Under the pieces are notes generated by a model, which saw nothing but the letters and a program-made list of their open reading frames with translations, was not told where the DNA came from and did no database searches. Shown in pieces: positions 250 to 10,865 of a DNA stretch of 64,000 nt. The stretch lies in the sequence record OQ427096.1, one strand, 5' to 3'. The position numbers and the translations under genes are program-made. Numbering within the stretch: the first letter of the stretch is position 1; every line of letters starts with the position of its first letter.

Positions 250-343
250 CCCGTTGTATCCCCAGACGCTACGAACGTCTACAAAGGTAACTGGAGTGGT
301 GTCAAAAGCACTGATGCAGGTTCGAATCCTGTCGACGGGTCCA
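250..343 (+). tRNA. Atypical D-armless tRNA-Arg(ACG)-like RNA with expanded variable region
   Basis: Acceptor CCCGTTG/CGACGGG+TCCA, anticodon arm AGACG-CTACGAA-CGTCT, T-arm GCAGG-TTCGAAT-CCTGT; no D-arm. Confidence 0.7.
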
Positions 344-1171: not shown

Positions 1172-1245
1172 GCGGGTATGGTATAGTGGTTGTGCCCTAG
1201 CCTTCCAAGCTAGAGAGACGAGTTCGATCCTCGTTACCCGCTCCA
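1172..1245 (+). tRNA. tRNA-Gly(TCC)
   Basis: GCGGGTA/TACCCGC, loop CT-TCC-AA, U73. Confidence 0.95.
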
Positions 1246-1256
1246 AGTTTTACGAT

Positions 1257-1334
1257 GCATCTGTCTGCTAATTGGAATAGGCAACGATCCTTTCAAGTTC
1301 GGGAATGCGGGTTCGAGTCCCGTCAGATGCTCCA
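1257..1334 (+). tRNA. tRNA-Glu(TTC), atypical (U73, T.T mismatch in anticodon stem)
   Basis: Loop CT-TTC-AA, GCATCTG/CAGATGC, CCA. Confidence 0.8.
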
Positions 1335-1340
1335 AGTTTT

Positions 1341-1415
1341 GCTCCACTCGTCTAGTGGCTAGGATGACACCCTTTCAAGGTGTAGAAGAGGGATCGAAAC
1401 CCTCGTGGAGTGCCA
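1341..1415 (+). tRNA. tRNA-Glu(TTC)
   Basis: ACACC-CTTTCAA-GGTGT, G73, CCA. Confidence 0.92.
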
Positions 1416-1421
1416 AATTAT

Positions 1422-1498
1422 GCGTCTGTAGCTCAACAGGATAGAGCATCCGGCTTCTACCCGGATGGCTGAGGGTTCGAGTCCTTCCAGGCGCGCCA
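1422..1498 (+). tRNA. tRNA-Arg(TCT)
   Basis: TCCGG-CTTCTAC-CCGGA, CCA. Confidence 0.95.
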
Positions 1499-1508
1499 AG
1501 TTTCAAAT

Positions 1509-1594
1509 GGATAGGTGGGCGAGTGGTTTATGCCAGCAGACTGTAAATCTGCCGCTTAATTGCATCGTTGGTTCGAATCCAACCCTATCCACCA
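1509..1594 (+). tRNA. tRNA-Tyr(GTA)
   Basis: GCAGA-CTGTAAA-TCTGC, long V arm, A73. Confidence 0.95.
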
Positions 1595-1601
1595 AGTTTA
1601 T

Positions 1602-1692
1602 GTGTCTGCTGTCGGGTTGGAGGACGGCACCGGGCTGTAACCCCGGATCCTCAAAAGGGACGTAGTAGGTTCGAATCCTACCAGGCACACCA
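1602..1692 (+). tRNA. tRNA-Tyr(GTA), divergent second copy
   Basis: CCGGG-CTGTAAC-CCCGG, long V arm, unusual D-arm, CCA. Confidence 0.85.
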
Positions 1693-1700
1693 AGTTATAT

Positions 1701-1776
1701 GGTTCCTTAGCTCAGTTGGTAGAGCAACGCTTTTACAAGGCGAAGGTCGTGGGTTCAAGTCCCTCAGGAACTACCA
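1701..1776 (+). tRNA. tRNA-Val(TAC)
   Basis: Loop TT-TAC-AA, cloverleaf, CCA. Confidence 0.9.
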
Positions 1777-1790
1777 AACGTTGAAACAGG

Positions 1791-1818
1791 TTGTGTAGAA
1801 AACAGCTTGGTATACAAT
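1791..1818 (+). promoter_or_regulatory. Putative sigma70-like promoter for the hammerhead/GOLLD unit
   Basis: TTGTGT-N16-TACAAT just upstream of the ribozyme. Confidence 0.4.
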
Positions 1819-1839
1819 AAGCAACATGAAGCAACGTCC

Positions 1840-1925
1840 AGACCACTGAAGAGTCGCCGGGACGATAAACAAAGGCACGAAACGTCGAGAGGCACAAAAC
1901 ATTAGCCTCGTGAGACGTCTGGTCT
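1840..1925 (+). ncRNA. Type I hammerhead ribozyme
   Basis: Stem I AGACCA/TGGTCT, core CTGAAGA (1846-1852), stem II GT(C)GCC/GGCAC, GAAA (1879-1882), stem III CGTC/GACG, GTC cleavage triplet (cut after 1919). Confidence 0.88.
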
Positions 1926-2760
1926 AGCAACTCAATTGTCGAAAGGCGATTGTTTAGGAATACGGTACAGTGATGTGCCTAATGGATTAAACGCCCACAA
2001 GCGGTCCGCCAGAGATGGTTCCTCTAGAACAAGTCGACATAGTGCAGCCGAAAGGTTGGCGTCTAGTATCCCTAGGCGATATGTGGAGGCTCAGTGAGAC
2101 ACGAGATTCAGGTCCAATGCCGAATGGTGAGGATTTGATCGTTTAGCGACGGTAGTGTTTCGGCTTAGCGGCAACTGACTCCAAGGACATTGAATCGGCA
2201 GGTACGTAGTTCAAGCCTTAGCGGGTAAGGGCGAGTATCAGGTCAGACGGACTAATGTTCGTACTGTATCACTCGGACGTAGGCTTAGCGGCTGAAACGA
2301 GAGGAGGTCGGGTAAGAAGCTGTCGCCCAAAAGGCTATGGACTTACGAACCTGCTCGACCTTAGTGGGCTTTCAACTTTGACGGTTAATCAAAACTACGA
2401 AAAACGCAAAGTCAGGTTCGGTCGTAAGTGAAAGTGGCTTAATCGTTGACACGAAAGTGAATCAACGCAATTTGAGGCTCGCAAGGCTGATGATTGTCTA
2501 TCAGGAAGTGCACCTAAGAGGAAGCCCCTCTGAATGGCTCGCAAGGTCAAGGGAAACGGGAAGGTAGAGTAGCTTACGATGACAGAGGAAACGCCACCTC
2601 TTTAAACTAGGCAGCCATGACGGTTAACAATGATGCATCGAAAGATGGTTGTTGTGGAAAAGTTGGGAAGGGCTCCGCAAGAGCTGATAATCCAAACGAA
2701 TGAATCGTCTCGTCAGACTGTATTCTCAGGTCGACACTTTGTTTCAAGGAGTTGTATTCC
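1920..2760 (+). ncRNA. Giant ornate RNA, GOLLD-like
   Basis: ~840 nt with no credible ORF inside a phage tRNA array; many GNRA-capped hairpins; end pairing CAACTC(1928-1933)/GAGTTG(2749-2754); motifs GAAACGAGAGGAG..CGGGTA, AACTACGAAAAA, CGCAAG, TGTATTCTCAG that I recall from GOLLD-type RNAs. Confidence 0.7.
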
Positions 2761-2800
2761 TCAAACGCTTCAATTGAAGTTTTTGCGAAATGCAATTTTT

Positions 2801-2878
2801 GGTCCCATAGTTTACGATTGGTTAGAACTCCCGCCTCTCAAGCGGAAGAATCGGGTTCGACTCCCGATGGGACTGCCA
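2801..2878 (+). tRNA. tRNA-Glu(CTC)
   Basis: Loop CT-CTC-AA, G73, CCA. Confidence 0.92.
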
Positions 2879-2886
2879 AGTTTTAT

Positions 2887-3090
2887 ACGCGTGTAGCTCA
2901 GTGGCGACGATAAGTTCAAAGACGGTAGGCATACTGTCACGCAGAGCGAGTCGAGGATTGGCGATACGACTGTGACGATACGAAGGTGGAGCTCGAGATC
3001 CTAGCTCCGACAATAACGGTACGGTCAACATTCGAGAGCGCCGGGTAGATAACCCGGAGGTCAGTGGTTCGATTCCATTTTCGCGTACCA
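2887..3090 (+). tRNA. tRNA-Ile(GAT)-like gene with ~130-nt structured insertion in the D-loop
   Basis: D-stem GCTC(2896-2899)/GAGC(3036-3039) separated by insert 2905-3034; CCGGG-TAGATAA-CCCGG; T-arm; ACCA. Confidence 0.75.
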
Positions 3091-3118
3091 TATAAGTAGA
3101 GTAGTACAAAAGTTTTAT

Positions 3119-3195
3119 CCGGGTTTAGCTCAGTCTGGCAGAGCACGCCGTTTGGGGCGGTGAGGTCGTAGGTTCGAACCCTGCAACCCGGACCA
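3119..3195 (+). tRNA. tRNA-Pro(TGG)
   Basis: CGCCG-TTTGGGG-CGGTG, CCA. Confidence 0.95.
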
Positions 3196-3209
3196 ATTAG
3201 AGAAGTGTT

Positions 3210-3449
3210 ATGGAAACTTTAGAAACGAAAGTGACACGTCTAGGCAATGGGCTTTATGGATGCAGGATCATCAGGTCAGCTGACAAGAAGCCAATTGTTG
3301 AATTAAGAGTTGAAAAGTCTCAGATTAGGAATGCTATGTTTGATATGCTCCGAACTCTAGACAAGCTGGGATATGATAGTCCTATGGCACATGCTTCGCG
3401 ACATCGCGGTAAGGCTTGTGTCACAGACTCGAAATATATCTGGCATTGA
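3210..3449 (+). CDS. hypothetical protein
   Basis: 79-aa ORF filling the gap between two tRNAs. Confidence 0.7.
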   Translation: METLETKVTRLGNGLYGCRIIRSADKKPIVELRVEKSQIRNAMFDMLRTLDKLGYDSPMAHASRHRGKACVTDSKYIWH

Positions 3450-3454
3450 TTTAT

Positions 3455-3540
3455 TCTGGACGCGCCTAATGGGGAGGCACCGGGCTGTTAACCCGGCGAT
3501 AGAAATATCCGACACGGTTCGATTCCGTGGTCCAGAGCCA
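3455..3540 (+). tRNA. tRNA-Asn(GTT) with long variable arm
   Basis: CCGGG-CTGTTAA-CCCGG, V-arm GATA-GAAA-TATC, G73, CCA. Confidence 0.8.
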
Positions 3541-3712: not shown

Positions 3713-3792
3713 CGGGATAGGGACTGCTAGGTGTGGTCGCCGGACTGTCAATCCGGAGAGTCAGACGGATTCGAATTCCGTTATCCCGACCA
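3713..3792 (+). tRNA. tRNA-Asp(GTC), divergent second copy (A73)
   Basis: CCGGA-CTGTCAA-TCCGG, CGGGATA/TATCCCG, CCA. Confidence 0.82.
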
Positions 3793-4176: not shown

Positions 4177-4265
4177 GGACTCGTTCCCGTAGTTGGTCGA
4201 ACGGAGCGGACTCTTAATCCGACGGCGAAAGCCCATCGCAGGTTCGAATCCTGCCGGGTCCACCA
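4177..4265 (+). tRNA. tRNA with CTT (Lys) anticodon on a type II body
   Basis: CGGA-CTCTTAA-TCCG, V-arm GGC-GAAA-GCC, A73, CCA. Confidence 0.8.
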
Positions 4266-4791: not shown

Positions 4792-4865
4792 TGTTCAGTA
4801 GCTCAGTTGGTAGAGCGGCTGCCATTTAGGGCGGCAGGTCGTGGGTTCGAGACCCACTTGGACGT
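4792..4865 (+). pseudogene. tRNA-like gene with aberrant anticodon loop and no encoded CCA
   Basis: Canonical D-arm TAGCTCAGTTGGTAGAGC and T-arm; GCTGCC-ATTTAG-GGCGGC gives a 6-nt (or 8-nt) loop. Confidence 0.65.
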
Positions 4866-4944: not shown

Positions 4945-5424
4945 ATGGTCATGCAGAAGAAAATTGACGTGAAAGCAGTCGAGGCGTTCATGCAGACGCA
5001 GAGCCCTGAGACAAAAGTTTATCTTGGAGCAGACTCCGAGAAGGTAAAAATCAATGGTAAGATGTACGCGGATTACACCGTCGTCATCGTTGTTCACATT
5101 GATGGTTGTAAGGGTTGTAAGGTATTCGCCGAGACAACTCGTGAGGAAGACTACGATAAGGACCCTTCAAAGCCGTTCACTCGGATGATGAAGGAAGCTG
5201 AAAAGGTAGCCGAGCTTCACGATCGTTTCAAGGACACCTTCTACGACTTCGAGGTTAGTATTCACCTCGACATCAACCCGAAGAAGACGGCAGGTTCAAG
5301 TATCGCAATGGAAGCGGCACGTGGTTACGTCAAGGCGATGACCATGGTTGATCCTCACTTGAAGCCTGTAGCATTTGCTGGTTCTTATGCTGCGGATCGC
5401 GCTAAAGAACTTGGTATGTGCTAA
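4945..5424 (+). CDS. RNase H-like YkuK (DUF458) family protein
   Basis: VYLGADS, IHLDIN..GSS, KP.AFAGSYAAD motifs. Confidence 0.8.
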   Translation: MVMQKKIDVKAVEAFMQTQSPETKVYLGADSEKVKINGKMYADYTVVIVVHIDGCKGCKVFAETTREEDYDKDPSKPFTRMMKEAEKVAELHDRFKDTFYDFEVSIHLDINPKKTAGSSIAMEAARGYVKAMTMVDPHLKPVAFAGSYAADRAKELGMC

Positions 5425-5959: not shown

Positions 5960-6208
5960 ATGAGCTTTAAGCCGGTTAATACTTTCGTCATCGTAAAGCG
6001 TAGGGAAGAAGATACAACGAGTCAGGGAGGCATCATCATCTCTGGATCAGTTGATCATAACCTCTTCACTGTTGTGGCCAAGAATGATCTTGTGACATTC
6101 GTTGAGCCCGGTGATACGGTAGTAATCAACATTCGCGAAGCAGCTGAAATCGACGATGTACATTACGCAGTTGATGCAAAGCACATCTTCACCAAGGTTT
6201 CTAAGTAA
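5960..6208 (+). CDS. GroES-like co-chaperonin
   Basis: FKPVNTFVIVKRREEDTTSQGGIII..V.PGDTV, GroES mobile-loop pattern. Confidence 0.8.
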   Translation: MSFKPVNTFVIVKRREEDTTSQGGIIISGSVDHNLFTVVAKNDLVTFVEPGDTVVINIREAAEIDDVHYAVDAKHIFTKVSK

Positions 6209-6428: not shown

Positions 6429-6503
6429 TGCCTGTTAGCTCAGTGGTAGAGCAATCGCCCGATAAGCGATAGGTCGTCAGTTCGATCCTGACACGGGCAA
6501 CCA
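6429..6503 (+). tRNA. tRNA-Ile(GAT), C33
   Basis: ATCGC-CCGATAA-GCGAT, CCA. Confidence 0.9.
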
Positions 6504-6507
6504 ATAA

Positions 6508-6581
6508 GCCTTCATAGCTCAAAGGTAGAGCACTCGCCCGATAAGCGATAGACCTAGGATCGTTACCTAGTGAAGGCACCA
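6508..6581 (+). tRNA. tRNA-Ile(GAT), C33, second copy
   Basis: TCGC-CCGATAA-GCGA, T-loop ATCGTTA. Confidence 0.88.
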
Positions 6582-6939: not shown

Positions 6940-6944
6940 AATAT

Positions 6945-7065
6945 GGGACTGTGCCGGATAGCTCCCGGACATTATGATGTGAGTAGGTTAGCCTGACTAG
7001 GGTGTTTGGTGCATCAGGCACCATCTGAAAGACTAATCCAAAGTTGATTGATGCAGGTCCCGCCA
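6945..7065 (+). ncRNA. CCA-terminated multi-hairpin RNA
   Basis: GGGACT/GGTCCC stem then GCCA; internal hairpins CCGG/CCGG, GGTGC/GCACC, TAATC/GATTG. Confidence 0.45.
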
Positions 7066-7252
7066 GATGCAAAAGTAAGACTAGCCGTTCAAGTCGGTAA
7101 GCACATGGTGTGCACCATGCCGCGTTAGGTGTGGAGGAGGCGTTCGAATCGTCGGTGGTTGCCAGGCCCCTATAGACACTGCTTGCAAGAGGGATTTAAA
7201 GTAACCAAATGAGGTCGCTCCTCGCGGAACAGTTCCCTCGGTACTATTCTAT

Positions 7253-7364
7253 GAAGGTTGTAGCTCAAAGGTAGAGCGCCGGGTGTCGGACCCGGGTCAA
7301 AGAGTATGAAGTTCGCGCGAACTGTCTGCTCAGGTGCAGGAGTCGAAGCCTGCCAGCCTTCCCA
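7253..7364 (+). tRNA. Atypical tRNA-like gene (TCG in anticodon position) with ~40-nt variable arm
   Basis: 8-bp GAAGGTTG/CAGCCTTC then CCA; canonical D-arm; CCGGG-TGTCGGA-CCCGG; V-arm with AGTTC-GCGC-GAACT; 8-nt T-loop. Confidence 0.65.
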
Positions 7365-8461: not shown

Positions 8462-8574
8462 AAATATTGGAGCGTAACTCAGCCAGGTGGCTGACGCTGT
8501 TTGCTAAACAGTTGGGACCCTATGAACGGGTCTGGGGATCGAGACCTCTGCGCTCCGCCAATTTGGATTTGATC

Positions 8575-10166: not shown

Positions 10167-10255
10167 GGATTGTTAACCAACCGGGGAGTTGGCACCGCTT
10201 CGAAAGCGGTAGGTGCCCGAAAGGGCATGGGGATCGAGACCTCAGCAATCCGCCA
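10167..10255 (+). tRNA. tRNA-Ser(CGA)
   Basis: ACCGC-TTCGAAA-GCGGT, long V arm, G73. Confidence 0.9.
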
Positions 10256-10778: not shown

Positions 10779-10865
10779 GGACAGTAATCTGGCTTGGTAG
10801 TCAGCACCGCTTGGAAAGCGGTTGGTACCGAAAGGTATGGGATTCGATTTCTCTGCTGTCCGCCA
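10779..10865 (+). tRNA. tRNA-Ser(GGA)
   Basis: ACCGC-TTGGAAA-GCGGT, long V arm, G73. Confidence 0.9.

What the first reader, a model, noticed from the sequence alone, without database searches (positions are those of the whole stretch)
2887..3090. tRNA-Ile-like gene with a 130-nt folded domain grafted into the D-loop
Seen: a normal tRNA start (acceptor, TA, GCTC, AGTGG) is interrupted right after G18G19 by 130 nt (2905-3034) and resumes at A21-GAGC. It then continues with a perfect anticodon stem, V loop, T-arm and ACCA. The insert has its own helices (GTCAC/GTGAC, GTCG/CGAC, GGAGCT/AGCTCC). The anticodon loop is TA-GAT-AA (A33, no U-turn base). I know of no bacterial or phage tRNA intron at this position, and standard tRNA finders would probably miss the gene. 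Inference: either a novel intron removed and resealed with phage ligases, or a tRNA scaffold that displays a functional RNA domain.
Basis: partly seen in the sequence, partly recalled or inferred. Interest (0 to 1): 0.82.

Follow-up and report, generated by a model that had tools for sequence, protein, structure and literature searches.

The report
Phage tRNA-Ile gene with D-loop insert
Two related Xanthomonas phages carry an otherwise complete isoleucine tRNA gene with a conserved 130-base extra module in its D-loop, a layout not known for bacterial or phage tRNAs, and whether the module is cut out or kept is still untested.

Summary
Window 2887-3090 (+) of Xanthomonas phage X1 is one coherent tRNA-Ile(GAU)-like gene. 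It has an acceptor stem, U8/A9, a GCTC/GAGC D stem, A14 and G18G19. A 130-nt insert (2905-3034) sits where nucleotide 20 belongs. After it come A21, the anticodon arm (loop UAGAUAA, A33), V loop, T arm and an encoded ACCA. ARAGORN, the Rfam tRNA model and the GenBank annotation all miss it. With the insert removed, ARAGORN calls tRNA-Ile.

It is very unlikely to be chance or junk. My split-tRNA scanner finds only this case in the window, and 4 of 3000 shuffles match it. Phage BUDD has the same gene with 4 changes in 204 nt. Two of them are a compensatory G-C to A-U pair in the anticodon stem. The insert is 1.5% diverged, against 6.5-10.8% for spacers.

Closer metagenomic relatives lack the gene at the same slot. 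No homologue of the insert was found anywhere, so its fold cannot be tested by covariation. Known intron types (group I/II, archaeal bulge-helix-bulge) and known ribozymes do not fit.

Best reading (about 0.45): a stable tRNA-shaped RNA that keeps the module, probably a tRNA-Ile mimic or scaffold rather than an ordinary translating tRNA. Rivals are a new kind of intron, a dead gene, or a module cut out as a separate small RNA.

The parts
2878..2886 (+). 5' leader/spacer AAGTTTTAT, the same spacer that precedes neighbouring tRNAs
   Evidence: Direct repeat with 3110-3118 upstream of tRNA-Pro. The same AGTTTTAT precedes tRNA-Asn in BUDD.
2887..2893 (+). Acceptor stem, 5' strand ACGCGTG
   Evidence: Pairs with 3080-3086 (5 WC, 1 GU, 1 mismatch). 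The three bases that differ from the tRNA-Pro 5' end in the 25-nt repeat all create pairs with this gene's own 3' strand.
2894..2904 (+). U8 A9, D-stem 5' strand GCTC (2896-2899), D-loop start A14 G15 U16 G18 G19 (2900-2904)
   Evidence: Sequence; scanner output.
2905..3034 (+). 130-nt insert at D-loop position 20, with no homologue found
   Evidence: Present in BUDD with 2 changes in 130 nt. No match in phages, plasmids, IMG/VR or GTDB genomes. No Rfam family within it at E<=10, apart from its last 12 nt (3023-3034), which fall inside the partial tRNA match and one E=5.8 chance-level match.
2921..2938 (+). Hairpin A: GACGGTA-GGCA-TACTGTC
   Evidence: Pair probabilities 0.96-1.0. The BUDD change T2935C turns a G-U pair into G-C.
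2988..3008 (+). Hairpin C: GGAGCT-CGAGATCCT-AGCTCC
   Evidence: Pair probabilities 0.95-1.0; identical in BUDD. Its loop AUCCU (2998-3002) is complementary to AGGAU (2954-2958); I read this from the sequence and did not test it.
2906..2982 (+). Three copies of GRCGATAMG (2906-2914, 2960-2968, 2974-2982), the last two inside a 14-nt tandem repeat (2959-2986)
   Evidence: Three of the six matches in the whole 64-kb window lie in the insert, against 1.3 expected for the whole window (the motif was chosen after seeing the sequence). Tandem repeat D5. BUDD's C2981A makes copy 3 identical to copy 1.
3035..3040 (+). A21, D-stem 3' strand GAGC (3036-3039), G26
3041..3057 (+). Anticodon arm CCGGG-TAGATAA-CCCGG; A33 at 3047; anticodon GAT at 3048-3050
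   Evidence: BUDD has G3045A plus C3053T, a compensatory G31-C39 to A31-U39 change. The same arm occurs in uninterrupted A33 tRNA-Ile genes of IMG/VR contigs L010, L012 and L013.
3058..3079 (+). V loop AGGTC (with G46 and C48) and T arm AGTGG-TTCGATT-CCATT
   Evidence: partial Rfam tRNA alignment.
3080..3090 (+). Acceptor 3' strand TTCGCGT, discriminator A73, encoded CCA
   Evidence: All but one of the other 36 tRNAs ARAGORN calls in this island also encode CCA.

Best explanation
This is a real, selected gene for a tRNA-Ile(GAU)-shaped RNA that keeps its 130-nt module.

Shown or read directly from the sequence:
- It lies inside the phage's same-strand tRNA array, with the array's usual spacer and an encoded CCA.
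- No promoter-like or terminator-like site lies within the gene.
- Every nucleotide that builds the tRNA L-shape is present: U8-A14, A9, G15-C48, G18/G19 with a normal T loop, G26-A44, C13-G22-G46.
- The module replaces only nucleotide 20. In solved tRNA structures this residue is in the variable, outward-pointing pocket of the D loop (established structural knowledge).

Inferred:
- The RNA is released by RNase P and 3' trimming like its neighbours and folds as an L with the module projecting near the elbow.
- A module of about 40 kDa there, together with A33 in place of the U-turn base, makes normal passage through the ribosome unlikely.
- The intact Ile anticodon loop (G34 A35 U36 A37 A38), A73, C4-G69 and U12-A23 keep it recognisable as tRNA-Ile.

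I therefore propose it acts outside ordinary decoding. It could be a mimic or decoy of tRNA-Ile for a factor that reads the tRNA-Ile anticodon loop, most plausibly a host tRNA-cleaving defence, since the tRNA-Ile(GAU) genes of X1, BUDD and five of their relatives have lost U33. Alternatively, the tRNA may serve as a processing and stability scaffold for the module, whose three GRCGAUAMG repeats look like binding sites. The target and the molecular role of the module are not shown.
For: - Gene integrity and significance.
- Independent isolate BUDD (USA; X1 is from China) has the same gene, so it is not an assembly artefact.
- Four differences in 204 nt. Two form a compensatory pair in the anticodon stem (probability 0.0024 for 4 random substitutions). 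One strengthens hairpin A.
- The insert is 1.5% diverged. Island spacers are 10.8% (Fisher p = 2e-4), ORFs 10.1%, and spacers in the same conserved block 6.5% (p = 0.04). The genome-wide X1-BUDD nucleotide identity is about 87% (PMC13384950).
- No promoter-like or terminator-like site lies within the gene. It shares the array's spacer and encodes CCA as nearly all the others do.
- No known intron or ribozyme family matches.
- U33 is lost in the tRNA-Ile(GAU) genes of X1, BUDD, L014, L018, L019 and L020 (seven genes C33, L019 TCGATAA) but in almost no other tRNA of these islands. A33 tRNA-Ile genes occur in unrelated viral contigs.
- The family keeps other non-standard tRNA-like RNAs under clear covariation (window 250-343, 11 of 17 pairs compensatory). 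Odd architecture here therefore does not mean decay.
Against: - There are no expression data.
- Only two closely related genomes carry the gene, so the insert's fold has no covariation support, and its predicted stability is no better than shuffles.
- The gene is absent from the same slot in the next-closest relatives (L018, L019, L023, L024) and replaced by something else in L014. It is therefore dispensable for the phage family and could be a recent accident.
- The conservation test rests on 2 substitutions in 130 nt, in a locally conserved block.
- The decoy and scaffold roles are inference only. The acceptor stem has a U-U mismatch.
Confidence: 0.45

Rival explanations
1. The 130 nt are an intron of a new kind. 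It would be removed either by a small self-splicing fold or by cut-and-reseal with phage or host enzymes (endonuclease plus polynucleotide kinase/RNA ligase or RtcB). The product would be a 74-nt A33 tRNA-Ile(GAU) that works in translation like the uninterrupted A33 tRNA-Ile genes of other phages.
For: - Removing the insert gives a tRNA that ARAGORN accepts and that has all tertiary-contact bases.
- Uninterrupted tRNA-Ile genes with the same anticodon arm and A33 exist in IMG/VR contigs.
- The X1 genome paper lists an RNA ligase (PMC13384950). Relatives encode an RNA ligase and a PNKP-like protein.
- The insert is conserved, as self-splicing introns are.
Against: - No group I, group II or self-cleaving ribozyme model matches at E<=10.
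- At 130 nt it is well below the size of known group I or II introns (established knowledge).
- The junctions do not form a bulge-helix-bulge. The D stem is followed by a 5-nt/1-nt asymmetric loop and only 3 closing pairs (CGA/TCG) (read from the sequence).
- No bacterial or phage pathway for removing a D-loop intron is known.
- No intron-less copy exists in any relative.
Confidence: 0.2
2. It is a dead gene. A former A33 tRNA-Ile gene was hit by an insertion of unrelated DNA in the common ancestor of X1 and BUDD and has not yet decayed.
For: - It is restricted to X1 and BUDD. The slot between tRNA-Glu(CTC) and tRNA-Pro is empty in L018, L019, L023 and L024 and holds other material in L014.
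- The phage already has two other tRNA-Ile(GAU) genes.
- The insert has no homologue and no significant folding energy.
- Homing-endonuclease genes come and go in these islands.
Against: - The insert and body are 4-7 times less diverged than spacers and ORFs of the same island.
- There is a compensatory double change in the anticodon stem.
- No tertiary-contact base is lost.
- There are no terminal repeats, no target duplication and no second copy of the insert in the window, and only one place in the X1 record.
Confidence: 0.15
3. The tRNA parts serve only as processing signals. The module is cut out by host RNases and acts as a free small RNA, and the tRNA halves are discarded.
For: The insert is conserved and carries repeated motifs. 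tRNA-flanked release of small RNAs is a known principle in tRNA arrays (general knowledge). T4's tRNA cluster encodes the stable RNAs C and D, whose function is unknown (PMC9697503).
Against: Release signals would only need flanking tRNAs. They would not need a split tRNA whose two halves keep a matched acceptor stem, D stem and all tertiary bases. The compensatory change lies in the anticodon stem, not in the module.
Confidence: 0.1

Closest known systems
Canonical bacterial/phage elongator tRNA-Ile(GAU) (Rfam RF00005)
   Same: Acceptor, D stem, anticodon arm, V loop, T arm, A73-CCA, all tertiary-contact bases, the anticodon GAU with A37 A38, and a position in a phage tRNA array.
   Different: The D loop is 136 nt instead of 7-11. 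It has A33 instead of the near-universal U33, and a U-U mismatch in the acceptor stem. The full gene scores below the Rfam threshold.
U33-less phage tRNA-Ile(GAU) genes (C33 in X1, BUDD and relatives L014, L018, L019, L020; A33 in IMG/VR contigs L009, L010/L012/L013, L011)
   Same: The same anticodon and loss of U33. L010/L012/L013 share the identical stretch from U8 to C48, apart from the D-loop filling and base 26.
   Different: Those genes are uninterrupted and 72-76 nt long. Their acceptor and T stems differ, so direct ancestry is not shown.
Group I introns in bacterial tRNA genes (e.g. tRNA-Leu, tRNA-fMet, Azoarcus tRNA-Ile)
   Same: An intervening sequence inside a bacterial-type tRNA gene, in one case also tRNA-Ile.
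   Different: Those sit in the anticodon loop, are about 200 nt or longer, and have the P1-P9 core. Here the site is D-loop position 20, the length is 130 nt, and no group I model matches.
Archaeal non-canonical tRNA introns (bulge-helix-bulge, some in the D arm)
   Same: An intervening sequence outside the anticodon loop of a tRNA gene.
   Different: They need a bulge-helix-bulge motif and the archaeal splicing endonuclease. The motif is not formed here, and the host is a gammaproteobacterium.
tRNA-like non-coding RNAs with an added domain: tmRNA, YrlA (Y RNA-like), phage T4 RNA C and RNA D
   Same: tRNA-like ends joined to a non-tRNA module. T4 RNA C and D also lie in a phage tRNA cluster and have no known function.
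   Different: tmRNA and YrlA replace the anticodon arm and lack a normal D arm. This gene keeps a full cloverleaf and adds the module in the D loop. ARAGORN finds no tmRNA here, and the YrlA model scores 15 bits against a threshold of 69.
Engineered 'tRNA scaffold' for expressing RNA modules (Ponchon and Dardel, 2007; from my own knowledge)
   Same: A tRNA body gives processing and stability to an embedded foreign RNA.
   Different: It is man-made. The module replaces the anticodon stem-loop, not D-loop position 20.

Membership tests
tRNA (RF00005), functional elongator | Cloverleaf: 7-bp acceptor, 4-bp D stem, 5-bp anticodon stem with 7-nt loop, 5-bp T stem with TTCRA loop, discriminator plus CCA | tested here: met
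   The acceptor has one U-U mismatch and one G-U pair.
tRNA (RF00005), functional elongator | D loop of about 7-11 nt; total length about 70-95 nt; score at or above the Rfam gathering score (29 bits) | tested here: not met
   The D loop is 136 nt and the gene 204 nt. Rfam gives only a partial 21.2-bit match. ARAGORN gives no call.
tRNA (RF00005), functional elongator | U33 (U-turn base) | tested here: not met
   A33 at 3047 in X1 and BUDD.
tRNA (RF00005), functional elongator | Aminoacylation and use on the ribosome | not testable with these tools
   Needs acid-gel or periodate assays and tRNA-seq.
tRNA-Ile identity (E. coli rules: G34 A35 U36 A37 A38, A73, C4-G69, U12-A23, C29-G41; from my own knowledge) | Presence of the identity bases | tested here: inconclusive
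   The anticodon loop bases, A73, C4-G69 and U12-A23 are present. Pair 29-41 is G-C, not C-G. The rules for Xanthomonas IleRS are not known to me.
Group I intron | Conserved P1-P9 core detectable by the Rfam model, size about 200 nt or more, anticodon-loop site in tRNAs | tested here: not met
   No match at E<=10. The length is 130 nt and the site is in the D loop.
Group II intron / self-cleaving ribozymes (hammerhead, twister, pistol, hatchet, HDV-like) | Match to the family covariance model | tested here: not met
   No match at E<=10 in 2780-3210.
Archaeal bulge-helix-bulge intron | Two 3-nt bulges holding the splice sites, separated by a 4-bp helix | tested here: not met
   The junctions give the D stem, a 5-nt/1-nt asymmetric loop, and 3 pairs CGA/TCG (read).
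tmRNA | tRNA-like domain without an anticodon arm, a tag reading frame, pseudoknots | tested here: not met
   ARAGORN searches for tmRNA and found none. The anticodon arm is present.
YrlA / Y RNA-like | Rfam RF02553 match at or above 69 bits | tested here: not met
   15.3 bits, spanning the 3' end of the gene and the next spacer.
GOLLD RNA (RF02032) | Lies inside the GOLLD model match | tested here: not met
   The GOLLD match ends at 2732, and a tRNA-Glu lies between it and this gene. Relatives with GOLLD (L014, L019, L023) lack the gene.
Phage T4 RNA C / RNA D type stable RNAs | Stable RNA processed from the phage tRNA cluster transcript | not tested
   Only the location in a tRNA cluster is shared. 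I made no sequence comparison and have no expression data.
Small mobile element (MITE-like or other insertion) | Terminal inverted repeats, target-site duplication, several copies | tested here: not met
   There are no terminal repeats or duplication at the junctions. It is single-copy in the window and in the X1 record.

The most novel reading that the evidence does not exclude
The 130 nt are a new class of tRNA intron. It would be the first at D-loop position 20 in a bacterial virus and far smaller than group I or II introns. It would be removed either by an unknown small self-splicing fold or by a phage cut-and-reseal pathway that reuses the tRNA-repair enzymes (kinase-phosphatase plus RNA ligase).
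Probability: 0.15. Interest if true: 0.9.

Novelty: new variant of a known kind. Interest (0 to 1): 0.6.

Why it matters
If the module is kept, this would be a natural counterpart of the engineered tRNA scaffold, and the first tRNA-shaped RNA known to carry a large domain in the D loop. It comes from a phage family whose tRNA-Ile genes all avoid U33, which points to a conflict with the host over tRNA-Ile. If the module is removed, it would be a new kind of RNA splicing in bacteria. Both outcomes can be told apart with one Northern blot in a culturable phage-host pair (X1 on X. campestris 8004). The case also shows that standard tRNA finders under-report the contents of phage tRNA islands. At least five further tRNA or tRNA-like genes in this same island were missed.

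Tried and rejected
Homologue searches for the insert, all negative:
- blastn against 50,697 phage genomes found only X1 and BUDD.
- Plasmids gave nothing.
- A gapped D-loop pattern in IMG/VR gave 5 chance hits in coding DNA.
- Three insert words of 18-21 nt in IMG/VR gave no hit.
- Two 21-mers in GTDB genomes gave no hit and one 22-nt chance hit inside a Rhizobiaceae coding region.
- I searched the protein database with the spurious 95-aa minus-strand ORF that spans the gene, hoping gene callers had recorded it in relatives. Nothing was found.

Relatives:
- GroES in IMG/VR gave nothing.
- The neighbouring DUF458/RNase H-like protein gave many relatives. I fetched 22 loci.
- A GOLLD 21-mer in JGI metagenomes gave two more loci.
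- None carries the gene. All other 'split' calls from my scanner were cross-matches between two neighbouring tRNAs.

Other ideas rejected:
- The spliced body has no close intact orthologue in the phage database.
- The insert shows no similarity to GOLLD or to the rest of the window, nor to the conserved non-coding stretch upstream of the A33 tRNA-Ile in L010-L013.
- The aberrant tRNA-like gene in the same slot of L014 is not specifically related (70% identity, below many ordinary tRNAs).
- I considered that the repeat CGATAAG mimics the C33-G39 stretch of the phage's own tRNA-Ile loops. The 7-mer is not rare (10 in the window, 5.5 expected), so this stays a loose lead.
- A coding role is unlikely. 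Only 20-24-aa plus-strand ORFs lie within the gene, longer plus-strand ORFs merely run into its first bases, and the minus-strand ORFs run across tRNAs.
- Thermodynamic stability gives no support for a special fold.

Full report
**Where this is.** The window is the last 64 kb of Xanthomonas phage X1 (OQ427096.1, 200,058 bp). Window position 1 is record position 136,059. Its first 11 kb form a same-strand tRNA island. ARAGORN reports 36 tRNAs there. A GOLLD RNA matches the Rfam model at 2303-2732 with 179 bits, and its 5' domain probably starts near 1790. The finding lies 155 nt downstream of GOLLD, between tRNA-Glu(CTC) (2801-2878) and tRNA-Pro(UGG) (3119-3195).

**Checking the observation.**
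- Acceptor ACGCGTG (2887-2893) pairs with TTCGCGT (3080-3086): five Watson-Crick pairs, one G-U, and one U-U mismatch at 6:67.
- T8 A9 follow, then D stem GCTC (2896-2899) with GAGC (3036-3039).
- The D loop opens with A14 G15 U16 G18 G19 (2900-2904). Then come 130 nt (2905-3034), then A21.
- After G26 come the anticodon stem CCGGG/CCCGG with loop UAGAUAA, V loop AGGUC, T arm AGUGG-UUCGAUU-CCAUU, A73 and an encoded CCA.

All bases that make the tertiary contacts of a class I tRNA are present (U8-A14, A9, G15-C48, G18/G19 with T loop, G26-A44, C13-G22-G46). I read this directly from the sequence.

ARAGORN, Rfam at its gathering score and the GenBank record miss the gene. Rfam at a relaxed threshold sees only the 3' three-quarters at 21.2 bits. 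After removing the insert, ARAGORN calls tRNA-Ile(gat) over a range of junction choices.

**Is it more than chance?**
- I wrote a scanner that finds a 3' tRNA portion and then looks up to 700 nt upstream for a matching acceptor strand plus D-stem strand. In the 64-kb window, on both strands, it returns 14 ordinary tRNAs and exactly one interrupted one, this gene.
- In shuffles of the upstream 700 nt, 136 of 3000 gave any matching 5' part. Only 4 of 3000 gave one that also had T8, A14 and GG.
- The 25 nt around the 5' end resemble the start of the next tRNA-Pro. The three bases that differ all lie in the acceptor strand, and each creates a pair with this gene's own 3' strand.
- The leader AAGTTTTAT is the array's usual spacer.
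- Across about 35 related loci, all other 'split' calls were cross-matches between two neighbouring tRNAs. The 130 nt here contain no tRNA.

**The insert itself.** However, GTCAC/GTGAC and GTCG/CGAC overlap with a stronger hairpin, GACGGUA-GGCA-UACUGUC (2921-2938). In a fold constrained to the cloverleaf, only that hairpin and GGAGCU-CGAGAUCCU-AGCUCC (2988-3008) have pair probabilities near 1. The folding energy is no better than that of shuffled sequence (z = -0.75 for the insert and -0.87 for the gene).

The insert holds three copies of GRCGAUAMG (2906, 2960, 2974). The whole window has six, against 1.3 expected. I chose this motif after seeing the sequence. The base of the insert is closed by only three pairs (CGA/UCG).

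There are no terminal inverted repeats, no target duplication, and no second copy in the window or the X1 record. No promoter-like or terminator-like site lies within the gene. No Rfam family matches inside it at E<=10, apart from its last 12 nt, which fall inside the partial tRNA match and one chance-level match.

**Comparative evidence.** The only other genome with this gene is Xanthomonas phage BUDD (ON758385.1). It was isolated independently in Florida, whereas X1 comes from a cave in China. This rules out an assembly artefact.

The two copies differ at four positions in 204 nt.
- G3045A and C3053T together change pair 31-39 from G-C to A-U. For four random substitutions the chance of such a compensated pair is 0.0024.
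- T2935C turns a G-U into a G-C in hairpin A.
- C2981A lies in a repeat copy and makes it identical to the first copy.

Divergence between X1 and BUDD across the island is as follows:

| Region | Divergence |
|---|---|
| Spacers, whole island | 10.8% |
| ORFs | 10.1% |
| tRNAs | 3.7% |
| GOLLD | 2.0% |
| Candidate body | 2.7% |
| Candidate insert (2 of 130) | 1.5% |
| Spacers inside the locally conserved block 1172-3196 | 6.5% |

The insert is less diverged than spacers with p = 2e-4 (all island spacers) or p = 0.04 (local block). Genome-wide nucleotide identity of the two phages is about 87% (PMC13384950). Both the body and the insert therefore look constrained, though the sample is small.

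**Distribution.** The neighbouring DUF458/RNase H-like protein (4945-5421) has many metagenomic relatives. I fetched 22 loci through it and two more through a GOLLD 21-mer.
- In L018, L019, L023 and L024, tRNA-Glu(CTC) is followed directly by tRNA-Pro.
- In L014 (84% protein identity), the slot holds a different aberrant tRNA-like gene (G33, T loop UUAAAUC) and an 88-aa ORF with an HNH-like motif.

The gene is therefore confined to the X1/BUDD lineage. No homologue of the insert was found in phage genomes, plasmids, IMG/VR or GTDB genomes, nor through a spurious-ORF search of the protein database. Covariation analysis of the insert is not possible with the data I could reach.

**A33 in context.** The two ordinary tRNA-Ile(GAU) genes of X1 (6429, 6508) have C33. 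The same holds for BUDD, L014, L018 and L020, and L019 has UCGAUAA. Almost all the other roughly 30 tRNAs in each of these islands keep U33. An IMG/VR scan for UAGAUAA tRNA-Ile genes found uninterrupted A33 tRNA-Ile genes in three unrelated groups of viral contigs. In L010/L012/L013 the stretch from U8 to C48 is the same as in X1, apart from the D-loop filling and base 26.

Loss of U33 in tRNA-Ile(GAU) is thus a recurrent phage trait and not a defect of this one gene. It fits the published idea that phage tRNAs escape host anticodon nucleases through anticodon-loop changes (PMC10264068; PMC11555353). That link is inference.

**What it most likely is.** I rank the 'module kept' reading first (0.45). 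The reasons are these.
- The insert replaces only nucleotide 20, the D-loop position that points outward in solved tRNA structures (established knowledge).
- All L-shape contacts are preserved.
- The insert is as conserved as the body.
- No known splicing signal or ribozyme is present.

A module of about 40 kDa at the elbow, together with A33, makes ordinary ribosomal use unlikely (inference). I therefore propose a tRNA-Ile mimic or decoy, or a tRNA used as a processing and stability scaffold for the module.

The rivals are:
- A new kind of intron (0.2). It is supported by the perfect tRNA left after removal and by RNA ligase and PNKP genes in this phage group. Against it are the size, the lack of motifs and the lack of any known pathway.
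- A recently disrupted dead gene (0.15). It is supported by the narrow distribution. Against it are the conservation and the compensatory change.
- A module released as a free small RNA (0.1).

**Comparison with known systems.** It works like a tRNA-like RNA with an added domain (tmRNA, YrlA, T4 RNA C and D, the engineered tRNA scaffold), but it is a member of none of these. tmRNA and YrlA lack the anticodon arm, and their models do not match. It fails three defining features of a standard tRNA: D-loop size, U33 and the model score. It fails the defining features of group I, group II and bulge-helix-bulge introns. I know of no bacterial or phage tRNA gene interrupted in the D loop, and two literature searches found none. 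I file it as a new variant of a known kind.

**Context that raises the prior for function.** The island holds other non-standard tRNA-like genes. Window 250-343 is a 94-nt RNA with an acceptor stem, no D arm, an invariant CUACGAA loop and a T arm. It is conserved in BUDD, Stenotrophomonas phage DLP_6 and at least eight metagenomic loci (five of them used in the alignment), and 11 of its 17 pairs show compensatory changes. Long-variable-arm copies of tRNA-Asn and tRNA-Lys(CUU) are also conserved across the family. In this phage group, unusual tRNA architecture is maintained by selection.

**Verdict.** The feature is real and unusual, and it appears to be under selection. It is known from only two close genomes and has no expression data. 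One Northern blot would decide between the main readings.

Noticed in passing
window 250-343 (+): Unannotated 94-nt tRNA-like RNA. It has a 7-bp acceptor stem, no D arm (a 7-nt linker instead), a 5-bp stem with an invariant loop CTACGAA (anticodon ACG), an invariant ACAAAGGTAACTGGA stretch, a variable hairpin, a normal T arm and CCA. It is conserved in BUDD, DLP_6 and at least eight metagenomic loci. In an eight-sequence alignment, 11 of 17 pairs show compensatory changes. ARAGORN and Rfam both miss it.
   Followed up: partly
window 6429-6503 and 6508-6581; L002, L014, L018, L019, L020: The tRNA-Ile(GAU) genes of X1, BUDD and four relatives lack U33 (loop CCGATAA, or TCGATAA in L019), while nearly all other tRNAs in the same islands keep it. 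Uninterrupted A33 versions (TAGATAA) occur in unrelated IMG/VR contigs L009-L013.
   Followed up: partly
window 2303-2732 (probably from about 1790): A GOLLD RNA (Rfam 179 bits) that is not annotated in the GenBank record. It is 81-87% identical in L014 and L019 and about 72% in L023. It is absent from L018, although L018 and L019 encode the identical DUF458 protein.
   Followed up: partly
window 7254-7364 (+): A tRNA-like gene that ARAGORN misses (Rfam tRNA 31.7 bits). It has a 37-nt insertion with its own hairpin in the variable region, loop TGTCGGA (G33) and an 8-nt T loop. Its D arm and anticodon stem (CCGGG/CCCGG) are the same as in the D-loop-insert gene.
   Followed up: partly
window 8469-8560, 10167-10255, 10779-10865 (+): Three clean class II tRNA-Ser genes (anticodons GCT, CGA, GGA) with 5-6-bp D stems. 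Neither ARAGORN nor Rfam (E<=1) reports them.
   Followed up: partly
window 3455-3540, 3713-3792, 4177-4265; L014, L018, L019, L022: Many amino acids have two adjacent tRNA copies. For Asn, Asp and Lys(CTT), one copy carries an extra-long variable arm (86, 80 and 89 nt). The long Asn and Lys forms recur in relatives.
   Followed up: no
L014 7923-7999 and 8054-8320: In the slot where X1 has the insert-bearing gene, this relative has another aberrant tRNA-like gene (anticodon TGG, G33, T loop TTAAATC) followed by an 88-aa ORF with an HNH-endonuclease-like motif.
   Followed up: no
L022 3589-4323, L026 1167-1793, L027 732-1358, L028 2914-3540: A roughly 208-244-aa minus-strand ORF is inserted between the DUF458 gene and tRNA-Leu(TAG) in several relatives but not in X1. 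In L022 and L028 it carries a faint SegE/GIY-YIG homing-endonuclease hit; the L026 and L027 copies have no Pfam hit on record. The islands are reshuffled by mobile genes.
   Followed up: no
L010 about 5960-6190 (-), L012, L013 about 1370-1597 (+): In three IMG/VR contigs, the only tRNA that Rfam found in the fetched stretch is an A33 tRNA-Ile(GAU). It is preceded by a conserved non-coding stretch of about 200 nt rich in complementary segments. No Rfam family matches it.
   Followed up: no
window 6940-7250 (+): About 300 nt without an annotated gene or convincing ORF. It contains a T-arm-like GGCGTTCGAATCGTC followed by GGTGGTTGCCA, but I found no matching 5' acceptor strand.
   Followed up: no
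window 4792-4865 (+): A tRNA-like gene that ARAGORN labels tRNA-??? (GenBank: tRNA-OTHER). It has a 6-nt anticodon loop in the predicted fold and no encoded CCA. It is conserved in BUDD and relatives.
   Followed up: no
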